A stretch of DNA of 64,000 nt from Stylophora pistillata (GCF_002571385.2 NW_019217996.1:309530-373529), one strand, 5' to 3'. Numbered from the stretch's first letter, positions 24,728-32,562 are shown. Notes: generated by a model not told the origin, from the sequence alone. Numbers and translations: made by a program.

Positions 24728-27700
24728 ATGTTTTACATCTCTCCATGGACGCTGCTCGGATTAATTTTTTGTACCGCCTACTTCGTTTTGGTCTTGTGTG
24801 GTTTTGGGAGAAAAGACGACCAGAGGAAAGTGAGTCAGAAATCCAACAAGGAATCAGTGTCCTCGACGAAAAAAAGCGACCATGAAACCAAAGAAGAACA
24901 ACCGAGGATAAAAGACCAGAAGTTGGATTGCATTGATCTTGGAAATGAATTGGAAGGCGGCAGATCGGACACGCAAAGGAAAATTCGCGAAGGCACGTTA
25001 TCATCTGAAATACCCAATGCTAACAATTCGTTAGAGAGTTCAAAACAAGCACCTGCCCACAGTGATAAAGGGGACAATTTAACAGTCAAACAAATTCTTG
25101 CACCTGTGAAACGCGACGCTTCTTTGCGGAGTCGAGATGCTTTGTATCCACAAGAGTTCAATGTGTCGGAGGACCGTGTCACAGAGGGAGAGAAAATCCG
25201 AGGTCAAGAAAATGAAACATCGAACTCGAACGCAAACGAATATTTTTCAGAATTTTTAGGCGGGAGTACCGAGCATTTTGAAGATTTGAAGTCTTCTCGT
25301 GAGAATCAGGGTGAAATTTCCGACATAGTGACGAGAACTTCGGTGAGCAGGGTTTCATCAGCACTCGAGGAATATAACTTCGCAGCGTTTGAGAATGAGC
25401 AACCAATATTGCACTCTGAACCATGTGTCGACGTTGTGGAACCAAATTATTCTAAGACAGATTTAAATAAAAACAGTTTATTCAGCGACTTTGCAGAAGT
25501 GTTAGTTTCCAAAGTCAAGACAATTGCCTTCAGTGACATCGACCTGGAACTGAGAGCCAATGTTTTGGCTGAAAACATTTCCACACAGATAGTTTATGAC
25601 GCTATTGGTCAGTTATCAGCTGATTCTGGCAAAGAAGAAATTGACACAAAAAATGTCCAGGAAATACACAGTTTTGCGGGAGATGTGATTAATTCTTTGT
25701 TCCAAGGTGCCACTGGTAAGGTTGCTTTGGTTAAAGATGTTGAAAGTTTTGCCAAAGATTTGAGTGAACAAATTATTAGTGAAGGTGTAGACATCTATGC
25801 TGCAAAACAGAAGTTTGAGCAAGGAAGAAAGAAAAAGGTGTCGCTTGGTGAAATTAAAATTTTCAGTGAAGATGTTGTGAGTGAAGTTTTATCAGATGGT
25901 ATTGAAGAGGCAGCTGTGCTGACAGATGCAAACAAGGATTACTCTACCAATAAAAACACTGCCCAGGTGACAGACTTGGAGGATCCAGTTCCACACAGTG
26001 CTGACAGTTTAACCGGTGAAGTTTGTCAAGCTGCTTATCAGGGAGTAGCTGTATCAAGTTCCTTACAACCCCATATCAGTGGTGTGGTGGAAAATTTGGT
26101 GAATGGGGCAATTTATGAAGCCTCTTTGAGAGTAAGGGCTTATCAAGGGAATGAGTCACAACAGGAGTCAGAATTACAAGCATACTCGCCCGAAATTTTG
26201 GATTCTCAAGTGGATGTGACGGTGAAGGAGTTAATATTTTCAGCTGTAAATGAAGCTGCTGATCACGAGAAGCAAAAAAGCAGCATTGCCCAGTAAAAAA
26301 TGCCAACGATTCAGAATGAGCTTGAATCTCAAGTAGGGTCCTATGTGGATGATGCCTTACAGAATGCAGTGAGCGAGGCTGCTGTAAAAGTTCTAGAAGG
26401 ATGTAGTGAAGCTACTCAGGAACATAGAGTGTTAAATGGTCATGTTGATCTTTCTCAAGACCCTGTCATGGAGGCACAGAATTGCCAAAGTACACCTGAA
26501 GATGTTGTTCTAGTAGGAAAGGAGATTAAAATTACAGATCAATCAGAAGGATATGATATTGTGCCTTCCAAAGACAATAATGTACAAACAGAGTTAACAA
26601 GGCAGAAAAGTGGTGACTTCTGGAGAAGGAGTTTGATTTCAGACTTGGAGGGAGATGAATTTGATGAAGTTGTTGAAAGTGAAAAATCTTTGCCAAGTGC
26701 AAGAGATTCAACCTCACCTTTGAATGACGAAGAACTCACTTCCGATGAAGATGCAGAGTTTATAGACTCTTCGGAGGATGAAGTCATTGATCATGGAGAG
26801 GATGCCAAACTGGGAGCAGTTGGAGGGTCAAATATGGCAAAGTATAGAAGCAATTACGATGACTTTGATAACGCTGATGAGGAGGATGATGATGACACTG
26901 ATGATGATGGTAATGAAGAGTTGTTTGTATCACAGTCAGCTGTCGATGGATTATGTGCGAGTAAACATACAAAAGATAGAAAAAGAAAGAAAAAGCGCAA
27001 AACACTCCCAAGAGCAAGGATACAGTCAGGTTAGATAACTGTTTCCAACTCATTTTCATTATTTTATTTGCCACAAAGCATTCTATAATTTTTAAGTAAT
27101 TAATCAATATCTACAGAAGGATTATATCGTTGCATTTATTAAGAAATTTGGTAGCAACTAAAAAGAATTATATTAAGTTATTTAGCAAGGGTTTTATTTC
27201 ATCATTGTTCAAATTTAGTTCTTAGTGTTTTCTTGTTTGGTAATTCTTGGAAATGTAAATACTGTGGATTGCATCTACCTTTCCATGCACATGATGAAAA
27301 CATGTTCTGGTGGCCTATCAACCTCAATAATTTGACTGATAAAAACTTGAAATTTTTCCCCACCATTAGCAGTGGGTTATTAGTTTTTTTTAACAAACAC
27401 AAACAGAAAGAATGGTCCAGGAGCTCTGCAAGTTCTATCATTTGATTTCATAAGTAGGTGGATAGTGGTACACCACATGTGACTGTAGATTACTGTCTTG
27501 TTTTTTTGACTGAAAACAACATTGCCAACCAACATCAACAAGCGTGAAAACCTTCTCAAGTGGGCAGGCAATGCAAAATCTTCACCAAGCTTTGGCGTCT
27601 TGTTTTCTTGATTCTTTTGTATTGAACAACTCATGTGAAGCTACAACTTGTACATCAAATTAATTCTCATGGTGTAAAGGAAAAGACAAATTATGATGTC

Positions 27701-30700: not shown

Positions 30701-32562
30701 TTGATGGTGGTTACTCTTGGAGATGTATAGTGTACTTATTTATATGGTGAATAATATTTTGGATTGCAGATTTTATTTGAGCACCTAAGTGCTCCTGCAA
30801 TGTATCTTGCCAATCAACTTGTTTTGTCTCTGTATGCCTCTGGCCTGACAGGCGGCATGTGTCTGTCCTCTGGGTTCTCAGTCACTCAAGCTGCGGCAAT
30901 TTATGAGGGATGTTTGCTGGCACATACTGTCCAAGAACTTGACATAGGAGGTCAGTCACTCACAAACAACCTCCAGAAACTACTCAGGGATAACAAAGGT
31001 CACAACTTCAATTCCTCCTCTGGCTGGCAGATTGTCAATAAAATGAAGGAAAACATGGCTTATGTGGCTCAAGGTAATCCTGAAATAGGTGTGATATATT
31101 TTAATTTTTTAAAAAATTTTGCCTAGTGAGTATCAATTTTTATATGATAACAAAGGTGAGTTTTAAGTGTGGGATAATTTAAATCAGCTCACTTGTCATC
31201 TAGATACAGATGGCTATCTCCCATCTACAGGATAAGAAAAGGTGGAAAAGTTTATATACTGTTGCTACGCTTTTACCAAAAGATTCAAGTCTGGATATGT
31301 CTACTGAAGTTTATCAGTGATTCTGTTGCGTGAAGACACAAGGAATATTTATCTATTTGTTACTGCTCTTGGATAGGAGGAAGTTTGTTAAGGTATCCCA
31401 TCCCCCCTTCTCGTTAACAACCTGTAGCCTCCTACATTTTTGACTTCCATCTCTTGTCTTAGTCATGAAACACAGCTGACTACAGATTAGTTAGTGCTCT
31501 CATTTTTGCCCCTCCACCCTGCTTCCTACCTTGACAAACACTTGTACCACTCACACCCTTATTCACCCTGCTTTCCCCCCCCCCTTGTTTCCCTGTCCAA
31601 TCATATTTTCTTTGTTTGTTTGTTTGTTTTTTTTACAGATTATCCCAGGGAGTTGCATCAGTACAAGACAAGTGATACACTGACTCGGTACTACATGCTG
31701 CCAGATGGCCAGTCTGTAGACATCAGCAGTGAAATGATAACCACTGCTGAACCTTTATTTAATCCTGAAACTCTTCTTGGAGCAGATGACACTGTCGCCT
31801 CGCAGTTCCCTATTCACAAACTGGTCAACAATGCATTCAGGAGGTGAAATGAATTCTTTGATCAATTTTTGTTCTAAACGAATTGCAAACAAAGGCTAAG
31901 CAGAGTGATTTTAAGCCTTTAACTTCAACGAGTGACCAAGACAGAATTTCTCCTTACAACATCAATACGATACAAAGCAGACAAGTGATGAGAATAAAGA
32001 AAATATCAAGAAGGGGATTTTTAGTTGATCCAATACCAAATTCTCCAAACTAAAACAACAAGAATTGTATGGCAGACAGTAAGGAGAACTACTAAATGAG
32101 ATCTTGGGGGCGAAAGGGTGAACTATTTACATTTCATTCAACTTTAGTCCTTTACTTATAGCCTAAACTGATCAAAAGATCTGCAACTCTTTAGTTTTAG
32201 GAAAACATGCTTTGAATTTAGCTTTAGTTTATTTTGAATCCTGGAATGTTTGAATTAAGGGTTTATGATTATTTTCTTGATAATTGCCCAGATGTTCTCC
32301 AGAGCTTCAGAGTGTTATGAGCCGAAACGTGGTATTATCTGGCGGCACGACTCTCATGAGGGGACTGGTGCCGAGACTCGAACGTGAACTCAGCAAAATC
32401 AACCCCAAGATACGAACCGTCAGTGCGCCTGACAATAGAAGGTATTCCGCTTGGATTGGAGGTTCAATACTGGGTTCCCTGTCGACTATAGACAGTATGT
32501 ATGTCACAACTGATGAATATGCTGACTATGGAGGGCGAATTGTGAATCAGAAATGTTTCTGA
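24728..32562 (+). CDS. Divergent actin-like (actin-related) protein with a long membrane-anchored acidic N-terminal extension; one in-frame TAA at 26294-26296
   Basis: Exons 24728-27029, 27874-28083, 29322-29482, 30770-31073, 31639-31843 and 32292-32562 (3453 nt, frame-consistent). Actin signatures: VVIDNGCGTIKLGMAG, YPMKAGLIENWSD, PILITE, LSLYASG, YMLPDGQ, VVLSGGTT, YSAWIGGSILGSL and C-terminal KCF. Confidence 0.85.
28125..28455 (-). mobile_element. SINE / L2-type LINE 3' fragment in an intron
   Basis: gtggctcatccagctggagcc...ggggtattac...cctgggtatagagagacactgtgagagtaaagtgt, a pattern typical of L2-tail repeats. Confidence 0.45.
29105..29210. repeat. Palindromic repeat end (hairpin)
   Basis: aacaattattc...gtgaatattgtcgaataatcccc / ggggattatttgacgatattcac...gaataattgtt; a partial relative lies at ~61020-61075. 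Confidence 0.55.

What the first reader, a model, noticed from the sequence alone, without database searches (positions are those of the whole stretch)
24728..32562. Membrane anchor + tandem AKAP-like helices + FFAT-like motif fused to an actin fold
Seen in sequence: an N-terminal hydrophobic anchor (WTLLGLIFCTAYFVLVLCGF) followed by basic residues. Then about 8 amphipathic helices at ~25476-26395, e.g. FAEVLVSKVKTIA, LAENISTQIVYDAI, FAGDVINSLFQGA, FAKDLSEQIISEGV, FSEDVVSEVLSDGI, VVENLVNGAIYEAS, TVKELIFSAVNEAA and YVDDALQNAVSEAA. Then an acidic tract with EFIDSSE (26756-26776), a basic patch KDRKRKKKRK, and a phase-1 splice into a complete actin domain. Established: PKA-R-binding AKAP helices have this 14-residue hydrophobic spacing; FFAT (EFFDAxE with acidic flank) binds ER VAP; AKAP1 uses an N-terminal signal-anchor for mitochondria. 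Inference: an organelle-anchored actin-related scaffold that could couple PKA signalling, ER contact sites and the actin cytoskeleton. I do not know of a described actin with this architecture.
Basis: partly seen in the sequence, partly recalled or inferred. Interest (0 to 1): 0.75.

Follow-up and report, generated by a model that had tools for sequence, protein, structure and literature searches.

The report
Membrane-anchored actin-like protein of corals
This coral gene really does join a membrane anchor and a long tail of conserved helices to a divergent actin fold, an uncharacterised architecture kept across stony corals, but its proposed kinase-anchoring and ER-contact roles remain untested.

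Summary
RNA from 4 of 4 runs reads that base as A or G (Lys or Glu), never T. The same RNA shows the predicted 27029|27874 GT..AG junction, and single contigs run from the anchor into the actin exons.

The gene is therefore real, expressed on the + strand and single-copy. The same fusion occurs in Oculina, Acropora and three transcript-derived proteins.

The C-terminal domain is a full actin fold, about 40-42% identical to conventional actin, with a degenerate second phosphate loop.

The 767-residue extension matches no Pfam or PDB family. It has eight helices whose hydrophobic faces are conserved in 26-27 relatives, and a core E-F-[IVL]-D-S-x-E motif present in 28 of 28 relatives.

A hemichordate protein may be a distant counterpart.

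AKAP-like and FFAT-like function is plausible by pattern only. Membership of AKAP families was tested and not met.

The parts
24300..24727 (+). 5' leader. It is transcribed contiguously and extends upstream of 24300 in one RNA contig. An in-frame TGA lies at 24695-24697.
   Evidence: X8 record 13 covers 24300-27027 without a joint and has 250 more letters upstream; X6 starts at 24514 and X1 at 24607. One search gives the sequence. One search shows several short uORFs.
24728..27029 (+). Exon 1 coding part, 767 codons plus 1 base (phase 1): membrane anchor, disordered linker, eight helices and an acidic/basic tail.
24746..24805 (+). N-terminal hydrophobic segment of 20 uncharged residues, followed by a basic flank (R28 K29 .. 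R33 K34; 24809-24829). It is a predicted signal-anchor helix.
   Evidence: One search gives the coordinates. The AF2 model of orthologue P0001 has a helix at 6-23 with block pLDDT 58-76. One search shows the segment aligned in 9 of the 10 coral-family rows printed; P0008 is an N-terminally shorter ORF.
25490..25528 (+). Helix H1 (FA start). Position 10 is Lys or another charged residue in 81% of relatives.
25565..25606 (+). Helix H2. Positions 1, 2, 5, 9, 10, 13 and 14 are hydrophobic in 27 of 27 relatives and position 17 in 96%.
25673..25711 (+). Helix H3 (F/Y-A start; Ala at position 2 in 27 of 27 relatives).
25748..25789 (+). Helix H4 (Phe at position 1 in 27 of 27 relatives).
25862..25903 (+). 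Helix H5 (F/Y-S-E start, Ser and Glu invariant).
26084..26125 (+). Helix H6, the most conserved of the eight (V-V-E-N-L-V-N-x-A-I-Y-E-A).
26219..26260 (+). Helix H7.
26294..26296 (+). In-frame TAA in the assembly. The first base is read as A or G in RNA.
   Evidence: 26294 T>A in the X8 and X1 contigs and in 1 of 6 X22 reads; T>G in the X6 contig and in 5 of 6 X22 reads; T in none. The nearest relative P0031 has Glu there.
26342..26383 (+). Helix H8, less conserved.
26618..26689 (+). Conserved W-R-R-S-L-x-x-D-L-E helix followed by an acidic E-F-D-E..S-E-K stretch.
   Evidence: W631, R632, L635, D638 and L639 are invariant in P0029 numbering. The AF2 model has a helix at 633-643.
26756..26830 (+). 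FFAT-like core E-F-I-D-S-S-E inside a 25-residue nearly invariant block (..E-D-E-V-I-D-H-x-E-D-A-K-L-G-A-V-G-G-S).
26858..26920 (+). Poly-acidic tract.
   Evidence: translation; alignment.
26942..27001 (+). Conserved V-D-G-L-C-x-S-K-P motif and a polybasic patch just before the actin fold.
27030..27873 (+). Intron 1 (GT..AG).
   Evidence: the joint 27027>27872 (cut +2) is seen in 3 contig runs and in 13 X22 reads with 6 starts.
27874..28083 (+). Exon 2, actin subdomain 1 start (D-N-G-C-G P1 loop).
29322..29482 (+). Exon 3.
   Evidence: joints 28082/28083 > 29321/29324; contig pieces end at 29482.
30770..31073 (+). Exon 4. It holds the degenerate P2 loop L-S-S-G-F-S-V-T-Q at 30863-30889.
   Evidence: The loose end behind 29482 equals the start of this exon..
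31639..31843 (+). Exon 5. Its boundaries are inferred from splice signals and from the match to orthologues.
32292..32562 (+). Exon 6, ending ..I-V-N-Q-K-C-F and then TGA at 32560-32562.

Best explanation
Shown here:
- This is a single-copy, expressed, six-exon coral gene of 1150 codons.
- Its product joins three parts: an N-terminal hydrophobic anchor, a ~740-residue and largely disordered extension, and a complete but divergent actin fold.
- The extension carries eight conserved amphipathic helices and a nearly invariant acidic EF-motif block.
- The same fusion is kept in both major stony-coral lineages.
- The TAA in the assembly is either an allele of the sequenced individual or an error, not the state of the gene in the species.

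Inferred:
- The anchor inserts with the bulk of the protein in the cytosol, because the positive charges follow the helix.
- The extension works as a membrane-tethered scaffold. I put about 0.3 on the conserved hydrophobic faces of helices H2-H6 docking partner proteins of the dimeric RIIa/D-D type, as AKAP helices do.
- I put about 0.35 on the acidic E-F-[IVL]-D-S-x-E block binding a partner such as the MSP domain of VAP. Ser5 and Ser6 fit a recalled casein-kinase-2 S-x-x-[DE] consensus, so binding may be phospho-regulated.
- The actin fold is probably a non-hydrolysing interaction module rather than a filament subunit, because it has lost D154, D157, G158 and H161 of the second phosphate loop.
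For: Transcript structure:
- The 27029|27874 junction is seen in 4 of 4 runs. Single contigs of 4041 and 4597 nt span the anchor exon and the actin exons. X22 reads have the first mate on the - strand, as expected for + strand RNA.

The stop codon:
- No RNA shows T at 26294, and the nearest relative has Glu there.

Copy number and conservation:
- The extension has one match in its own genome.
- 44 relatives of the extension were found. Six of them are long enough to include Pfam Actin: Oculina patagonica LOC144630315, Acropora palmata LOC141886805, A. cervicornis 'Actin-100' and three transcript-derived proteins.
- Identity to Oculina is 55-58% in the extension and 81-90% in the actin exons.

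Actin fold:
- It covers Pfam Actin positions 4-410 of 410 at 6.7e-97.
- All 60 listed PDB matches are actins.

Helices and motif:
- Hydrophobic positions 1, 2, 5, 9, 10, 14 and 17 are 93-100% hydrophobic in 26-27 relatives for H2-H6, apart from an invariant Ser at position 2 of H5 and a mostly Ser/Thr position 14 of H3. Intervening positions vary or are charged.
- The FFAT-like core is present in 28 of 28 relatives, 24 of them with a flank charge of at least 3.
- The AF2 model of the extension shows the anchor helix, helices at 245-561 with block pLDDT 42-82, and coil around the EF-motif.

Partner genes:
- The genome has 5 RIIa-domain loci and 2 MSP-domain loci.
Against: - No AKAP family model matches. 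PF05716 and PF10522 are absent, and PF15127 reaches only E=0.11 in 2 of 30 members.
- The family profile gives 0 PDB hits.
- A helix-unit profile picks designed armadillo and Pumilio repeats, not AKAP peptides, and none of these hits is significant.
- H2 and H6 used alone give 0 PDB hits.
- The i, i+1, i+4, i+5 hydrophobic pattern fits any packed helix.
- H1 carries a conserved charged residue at position 10 and H7 at position 17. [quoted passage not shown]
- Conservation around the EF-motif runs about 18 residues beyond a 7-residue FFAT. Phospho-mimic Glu at position 5 abolished VAP targeting in AKAP220 (PMC3261905).
- AF2 gave pTM 0.18, so it cannot tell isolated helices from a folded domain.
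- The full-length model failed.
- Membrane insertion, topology, organelle and nucleotide binding were not testable.
Confidence: 0.6

Rival explanations
1. The eight helices are not independent docking sites. They are the repeats of one folded alpha-helical repeat domain (ARM/HEAT/PUF-like), and their conserved hydrophobic faces are simply its core. The protein is then a membrane-anchored actin-like protein with a structural helical domain of unknown ligand.
For: - The helix-unit profile's only PDB matches, all non-significant, are designed armadillo repeats and Pumilio repeats.
- The helices recur every 25-45 residues.
- The hydrophobic periodicity is generic.
- AF2 predicts long helices of 22-55 residues, not 14-18-residue segments.
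- No AKAP model matches.
Against: - AF2 gives no tertiary packing (pTM 0.18). The alignment is shallow, so this is weak evidence.
- The polar faces are acidic and variable, as in AKAP helices.
- The protein-language-model look-alike among named clusters is an AKAP4/AKAP_110 cluster, with score 0.79, which is a lead only.
Confidence: 0.3
2. In this genome the gene is a pseudogene or null allele. The TAA at 26294-26296 truncates the product after 522 residues, before the FFAT-like block and the actin fold.
For: The stop is in the assembly. The site is tri-allelic, T/A/G, so a nonsense allele could segregate.
Against: - No T appears at 26294 in the 6 X22 reads or in the 3 contigs from other runs.
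- Everything downstream is intact: an open frame, canonical splice sites, and 81-90% identity of the actin exons to Oculina.
- It is a single base, which could be an assembly or consensus error.
Confidence: 0.1
3. The hydrophobic N-terminus is a cleaved signal peptide and the protein is lumenal or secreted, not cytosol-facing.
For: The segment is N-terminal, uncharged and hydrophobic, with small residues (G-F-G) at its end.
Against: - This part rests on recalled general knowledge. The 20-residue uncharged span is long for a signal-peptide core. The positive charges follow it.
- The rest of the protein is an acidic, disordered region plus an actin fold, which is a cytosolic or nuclear fold.
- No signal-peptide predictor was available here.
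Confidence: 0.05
4. The fusion is an artefact: two neighbouring genes, one for the anchor/helix protein and one for an actin-like protein, are transcribed separately.
For: Prokaryote-style ORF calls in public collections list exon 1 alone. Coverage in X6 and X22 is 4-7 times lower over the 5' part of exon 1.
Against: - Spliced reads and contigs join the two parts in 4 of 4 runs.
- RefSeq models and transcript-derived proteins of other corals have the same fusion.
- The actin exon 2 has no start codon context of its own and begins in phase 1.
Confidence: 0.02

Closest known systems
Conventional actin and the orphan 'actin-like' paralogues (Pfam PF00022)
   Same: It has a full-length actin fold. 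All 60 listed PDB matches are actins (best 9.4e-95). D11, K18, Q137, the G301-G302-T303 loop and the C-terminal ..K-C-F are kept.
   Different: - It is only about 40-42% identical to actins.
- The P2 loop D-S-G-D-G-V-x-H is L-S-S-G-F-S-V-T-Q, a state kept in all 5 full-length coral orthologues.
- There are small insertions in the D-loop and the plug region.
- It carries a 767-residue membrane-anchored extension that no described actin has, to my knowledge and in four literature searches.
AKAP220 (AKAP11), AKAP110 (AKAP3) and SKIP: multi-helix A-kinase anchors with FFAT-like motifs
   Same: - It has several amphipathic helices with hydrophobic residues at positions 2, 5, 6, 9, 10, 13, 14 and 17, some starting F-A (PMC12083921, passages).
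- It has an FFAT-like motif with Ser at position 5 and a non-aromatic residue at position 3 in an acidic tract. AKAP220's EFFDS-D and DFVTA-E are comparable and were tested for VAP-dependent ER targeting (PMC3261905, passages and Table 1).
- The weak protein-language-model neighbour is an AKAP4/AKAP_110 cluster (0.79).
   Different: - There is no detectable sequence homology. Pfam AKAP_110 and RII_binding_1 give no match in 30 of 30 members.
- These AKAPs have no actin fold and no N-terminal anchor.
- Binding was not tested here.
smAKAP and D-AKAP1 (AKAP1): membrane-tethered AKAPs
   Same: The idea of a membrane or organelle tether plus an R-subunit docking helix is shared. smAKAP has a Y/F-A start (PMC12083921). 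There is a faint Pfam SmAKAP match over one helix (E=0.11).
   Different: smAKAP is a ~100-residue lipid-anchored protein of vertebrates. AKAP1's signal-anchor is recalled from memory and was not checked here. Neither has tandem arrays of eight helices or an actin fold.
Saccoglossus kowalevskii LOC100374707 (P0057, 1404 aa, uncharacterised)
   Same: - It has an N-terminal hydrophobic segment, a ~1000-residue low-complexity extension, and a W-x-x-x-L..E-L helix followed by an acidic E-F-Y-E-S-D-D tract before a C-terminal actin fold.
- That fold also has Ser at the D154 position, plus N-W-S-D, S-A-W and D-E-Y-A-D.
- It groups with the coral clade at 99 UFBoot / 98 SH-aLRT.
   Different: - It has no AKAP-like helix array.
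- hhalign of the coral profile against it aligns only the actin fold.
- The tree has long branches and lacks Arp and ACTL reference sequences, so orthology is provisional.
PTPIP51/RMD3: outer-mitochondrial-membrane protein that binds VAPB through FFAT-like motifs
   Same: It has an N-terminal anchor plus a cytosolic FFAT-like motif that builds an organelle-ER contact (PMC3261905, passage).
   Different: It is an unrelated sequence, with a TPR domain instead of an actin fold and no helix array.

Membership tests
Actin family (Pfam PF00022) | Match to the whole actin-fold profile above the gathering score | tested here: met
   The window exons cover profile positions 7-410, each with E 5e-05 to 4e-26. 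Orthologue P0029 matches 4-410 of 410 at 325 bits against a cut-off of 27.
Conventional (filament-forming, ATP-hydrolysing) actin | Intact phosphate-binding loops and catalytic residues (D11, S14, Q137, D154, D157, G158, H161; numbering recalled and checked against the alignment) | tested here: not met
   In one search, D11, K18 and Q137 are kept. S14 is Cys, D154 is Ser, D157 is Phe, G158 is Ser and H161 is Gln. The same holds in the window and in 5 of 5 full-length orthologues.
Conventional (filament-forming, ATP-hydrolysing) actin | High identity to other actins (typically far above 70%; recalled) | tested here: not met
   Identity to actin domains of animals, plants and fungi is 37-44%.
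Named Arp classes (Arp1, Arp2, Arp3 and others) | Closer to that Arp class than to actin | tested here: inconclusive
   The 60 best of 161 PDB sequences are all actins. No Arp reference set could be added to the tree.
A-kinase anchoring proteins (functional class) | A 14-18-residue amphipathic helix with hydrophobic residues at positions 2, 5, 6, 9, 10, 13, 14 and 17 (PMC12083921) | tested here: met
   H2-H6 fit, apart from small Ser/Thr/Gly residues at position 2, 6, 13 or 14 in some helices, and keep the pattern in 26-27 relatives. H1 and H7 each have one conserved charged residue on the face. The pattern is not specific to AKAPs.
A-kinase anchoring proteins (functional class) | Binding to the D/D domain of PKA RI or RII | not testable with these tools
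   No complex prediction or assay was available. The genome does encode 5 RIIa-domain loci.
AKAP_110 / RII_binding_1 / SmAKAP sequence families (PF05716, PF10522, PF15127) | Profile match above threshold | tested here: not met
   PF05716 and PF10522 match 0 of 30 members even at E up to 10. PF15127 matches 2 of 30 at E=0.11 against a cut-off of 27 bits.
FFAT-like motif proteins (VAP interactors) | [quoted passage not shown] | tested here: met
   E-F-I-D-S-S-E with flank T-S-D-E-D-A. There is one hit in the exon against 0.01 in shuffles. The core is present in 28 of 28 relatives. The exact 'suboptimal elements' score needs the paper's Table S2, a supplement I could not open.
FFAT-like motif proteins (VAP interactors) | Motif not helical, cytosolic, and conserved more than its neighbours (criteria A-C of PMC3261905) | tested here: inconclusive
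   The region is coil with pLDDT below 50 in AF2. Cytosolic exposure is inferred only. The neighbours are as conserved as the core, so criterion C is not met in the strict sense.
FFAT-like motif proteins (VAP interactors) | Binding to the MSP domain of VAP | not testable with these tools
   Two MSP-domain loci exist in the genome. There is no binding test.
Signal-anchored membrane proteins | An N-terminal uncharged hydrophobic span of about 20 residues with a basic C-terminal flank | tested here: met
   W7-F26 is uncharged and is followed by R28 K29 .. R33 K34. It is predicted helical and conserved. Insertion and the target organelle are not testable here.

The most novel reading that the evidence does not exclude
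This is an old family, shared by cnidarians and deuterostomes, of membrane-anchored actin-fold proteins. In corals, the cytosolic extension has become a multivalent anchor for D/D-domain proteins (PKA regulatory subunits or their R2D2 relatives). It also carries a phospho-switchable VAP-binding motif. Together these would place cAMP signalling and a non-polymerising actin module at an organelle-ER contact site. That would be an 'actin-AKAP' with no described counterpart.
Probability: 0.2. Interest if true: 0.8.

Novelty: new variant of a known kind. Interest (0 to 1): 0.6.

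Why it matters
Actin-fold proteins are known as soluble filament subunits, Arp complex members or chromatin-remodeller subunits. I found no description of one tethered to a membrane by its own anchor and preceded by a 740-residue scaffold.

If the helices dock D/D domains, this would be a lineage-independent invention, or a deep relative, of multivalent AKAPs in an early-branching animal. 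It would bear on when PKA anchoring arose; PMC12083921 places a few AKAPs at the base of Metazoa.

If the hemichordate link holds, the family predates the cnidarian-bilaterian split and has gone unnoticed.

Practically, the gene is annotated only as 'uncharacterized protein' or mis-named 'Actin-100' in coral genomes. Prokaryote-style ORF callers also report exon 1 alone as a protein.

Tried and rejected
- **Mammalian testis actin-like gene.** My first guess was dropped once the genome proved to be a coral.
- **Pfam on the extension.** Single proteins and all 30 alignment members gave nothing above threshold.
- **PDB sequence searches.** The family profile, a helix-unit profile and two single helices gave 0 or non-significant hits.
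- **ESM Atlas.** There was no usable hit for residues 1-765. Residues 240-560 gave only sub-threshold leads.
- **AF2 of full-length P0029.** The model failed, with mean pLDDT 35.8 and even the actin fold unfolded, probably because only 5 rows cover that part. The planned comparison of motif confidence with and without the actin fold could not be made.
- **Fold search with the N-terminal model.** I did not run it, because a pLDDT-44.7 model gives meaningless matches.
- **Distant relative P0007.** Searching with it found only P0008, and cluster look-up gave no names. The taxa of the most distant relatives, and whether they keep the actin exons, remain unknown.
- **hhalign against the Saccoglossus protein.** The coral profile aligned only the actin fold.
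- **Micro-exon in intron 1.** I looked for a counterpart of the Acropora micro-exon in the window's intron 1 and found none.
- **Sponge divergent actin (PMC12146513).** The passages I read describe an unrelated actin of 74% identity.
- **Papers.** PMC12083921, PMC12203939, PMC3261905 and PMC12146513 were read as 'find' passages only. Their supplements were not seen: Table S2 and S3 of PMC3261905 and Fig. S2 of PMC12083921. These may hold the exact FFAT scoring and the AKAP helix lists.

Full report
**What is in the window.** On the + strand an ATG at 24728 opens a frame that runs to a donor CAG|GT after 27029. An in-frame TGA lies 33 bases upstream, at 24695-24697.

As a result the window holds a 522-codon ORF and a 244-codon ORF in the same frame. 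Downstream, five exons with canonical AG/GT borders together cover Pfam Actin positions 7-410. They are 27874-28083, 29322-29482, 30770-31073, 31639-31843 and 32292-32562. The phases add up to 1150 codons including the stop. The - strand holds only short chance ORFs here.

**Is it one transcript, and is the stop real?** Of the 24 public runs listed, 20 hold the stretch, in 9 studies. The RNA-type runs hold 0.61-0.72 of the sampled words of 24600-28100. That share is about what exons without the intron would give.

I laid three contig runs and one raw-read run on 24300-30299.
- The joint 27029|27874 (GT..AG) is present in one contig each of X6, X8 and X1, and in 13 X22 reads with 6 start points.
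- The next joint, 28083|29322, is present in all four runs.
- The X8 contig's loose end behind 29482 equals the first bases of exon 4.
- Single contigs of 4041 nt (X1) and 4597 nt (X8) run from the leader through exon 1 into the actin exons.
- X22 first mates lie almost only on the - strand, as expected for a + strand RNA in a stranded library.
- Base 26294 is A in the X8 and X1 contigs and in 1 of 6 X22 reads. It is G in the X6 contig and in 5 of 6 X22 reads. It is T in none.

The codon is therefore AAA or GAA in these colonies, and the nearest relative has Glu there. The TAA is either an allele of the sequenced individual or a consensus error.

**Conservation.** HMMER of the first 522 residues against 1.84 billion representatives found 9 proteins. 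All are ORF calls that stop just past the conserved ..R-I-Q-S|G splice site. A word-indexed search with the best of them gave 44 proteins. Six are long enough to carry Pfam Actin:
- Oculina patagonica LOC144630315 (1147 aa);
- Acropora palmata LOC141886805 (1118 aa);
- A. cervicornis 'Actin-100' (955 aa, partial);
- three transcript-derived proteins of 1119-1130 aa.

The fusion is thus kept in both robust and complex stony corals; assigning Oculina to the robust clade and Acropora to the complex clade is recalled. Compared exon by exon, the window is 55-58% identical to Oculina in the extension and 81-90% in the actin exons.

I did not build or search the window's joined model. Natural full-length orthologues stood in for it.

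The extension has one locus in its own genome. Two distant relatives, P0007 and P0008, are about 30% identical.

**The actin fold.** It aligns end to end with actin. The best PDB match is at 9.4e-95, and the 60 best of 161 PDB sequences are all actins. Identity to actin domains is about 40-42%.
- Kept: D11, K18, Q137, the G-G-T loop and the C-terminal K-C-F.
- Changed: S14 to Cys, and the second phosphate loop D-S-G-D-G-V-x-H to S-S-G-F-S-V-T-Q. The changed loop is identical in all five full-length orthologues.
- There are also small insertions in the D-loop and plug regions.

I infer from established actin biochemistry (recalled) that ATP hydrolysis, and perhaps nucleotide binding and polymerisation, are lost. 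This was not tested.

**The extension.** No Pfam family matches, and the family profile has no PDB match. AF2 on orthologue P0001 with 29 aligned rows gave mean pLDDT 44.7 and pTM 0.18.
- The anchor helix is at 6-23.
- Residues 28-245 are disordered.
- Helices between 245 and 561 have block pLDDT 42-82.
- A short helix lies over W-R-R-S-L-I-L-D-L-E.
- The EF-block is coil.

Across 26-27 relatives, positions 1, 2, 5, 9, 10, 14 and 17 of H2-H6 are 93-100% hydrophobic, apart from an invariant Ser at position 2 of H5 and a mostly Ser/Thr position 14 of H3. Positions 6 and 13 are small or hydrophobic, and the other face varies and is acidic. H1, H3 and H4 start F-A and H5 starts F-S.

This matches the positions given for AKAP helices and the 'FA motif' of type I AKAPs (PMC12083921, passages). 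However, the same periodicity fits any packed helix. A helix-unit profile found only non-significant armadillo and Pumilio repeats. H1 and H7 each carry a conserved charge on the face. A language-model look-alike search returned an AKAP4/AKAP_110 cluster at 0.79, below the level that counts.

**The EF-block.** The core fits the published FFAT-like search pattern. It occurs once in the exon against 0.01 in shuffles, and it is present in 28 of 28 relatives as E-F-[IVL]-D-S-[SE]-E. It resembles AKAP220's EFFDS-D, which targeted the ER through VAP with Ser5 tolerated and Glu5 inactive (PMC3261905, Table 1 and text).

There are two caveats.
- The block conserved here is 25 residues long, so the partner may recognise more than, or something other than, an FFAT.
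- Ser5 and Ser6 sit in S-x-x-[DE] contexts, which fit a recalled casein-kinase-2 consensus. Phosphorylation there would be expected to block VAP binding.

The genome encodes candidate partners: 5 RIIa and 2 MSP loci.

**A possible deep relative.** I searched the actin part among long proteins only. This returned Saccoglossus LOC100374707 at 44% identity, the highest outside corals. It has an N-terminal hydrophobic segment, a ~1000-residue extension, and a W-H-K-A-L..E-L helix with an acidic E-F-Y-E-S-D-D tract. Its actin fold shares Ser at D154, N-W-S-D, S-A-W and D-E-Y-A-D with the coral proteins.

In a 31-row IQ-TREE analysis it is sister to the coral clade at 99/98 support. The program warned that long branches meet. 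The rows were only the long actin-bearing proteins; domains covering fewer than 330 profile positions were dropped, and no Arp or ACTL references were included. hhalign found no similarity outside the actin fold. The link is therefore provisional.

**Verdict.** The gene model is confirmed by RNA and by orthologues. The functional reading is a reasonable hypothesis resting on conserved patterns, with family membership tested and not met. I rate it a new architectural variant of the actin family: uncharacterised in print as far as four searches show, present in RefSeq only as 'uncharacterized protein'.

Noticed in passing
window 26294: The site is tri-allelic: T in the assembly (stop), A in two runs (Lys), and G in two runs (Glu). 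An ATG follows two codons later, at 26300. On the nonsense allele, re-initiation there could give an anchor-less product.
   Followed up: partly
window 24700-26300 versus 26300-28100: RNA coverage is 4-7 times lower over the 5' part of exon 1 in X6 (about 6 versus 44) and in X22 (about 0.6-3.4 versus 13). This is either 3' bias or an internal start. It remains unexplained.
   Followed up: no
window 25257: The X8 transcript contig has an in-frame 6-base insertion (GTACCG) behind 25257, which is a two-residue length polymorphism in the disordered linker.
   Followed up: no
window 28500-28700, 28900-29300, 29500-29700, 29900-30299 (introns 2 and 3): Summed contig depth is in the thousands to tens of thousands, and many opposite-strand joints occur in all four RNA runs. 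These are high-copy, transcribed inverted-repeat elements inside the introns. They resemble the MITEs that earlier notes describe in the neighbouring gene.
   Followed up: no
P0043, P0045, P0048 (Acropora-group proteins), between the extension and the actin fold: An extra 12-19-residue segment (..K-K-K-L..) is present in some isoforms and absent in P0044, so it is an alternative micro-exon. Neither a counterpart nor such a joint was seen in the window.
   Followed up: partly
window 24050-24727: The long 5' leader seen in X8 holds nine upstream ATGs with ORFs of 2-27 codons.
   Followed up: no
public protein collections (P0001-P0047): Exon 1 read into the intron is catalogued many times as a stand-alone ~740-830-residue 'protein' ending ..R-I-Q-S-G. 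This is an artefact of prokaryote-style ORF calling on coral contigs.
   Followed up: yes
window ~3200-3900: A run of N (an assembly gap or masked stretch) was left untouched.
   Followed up: no
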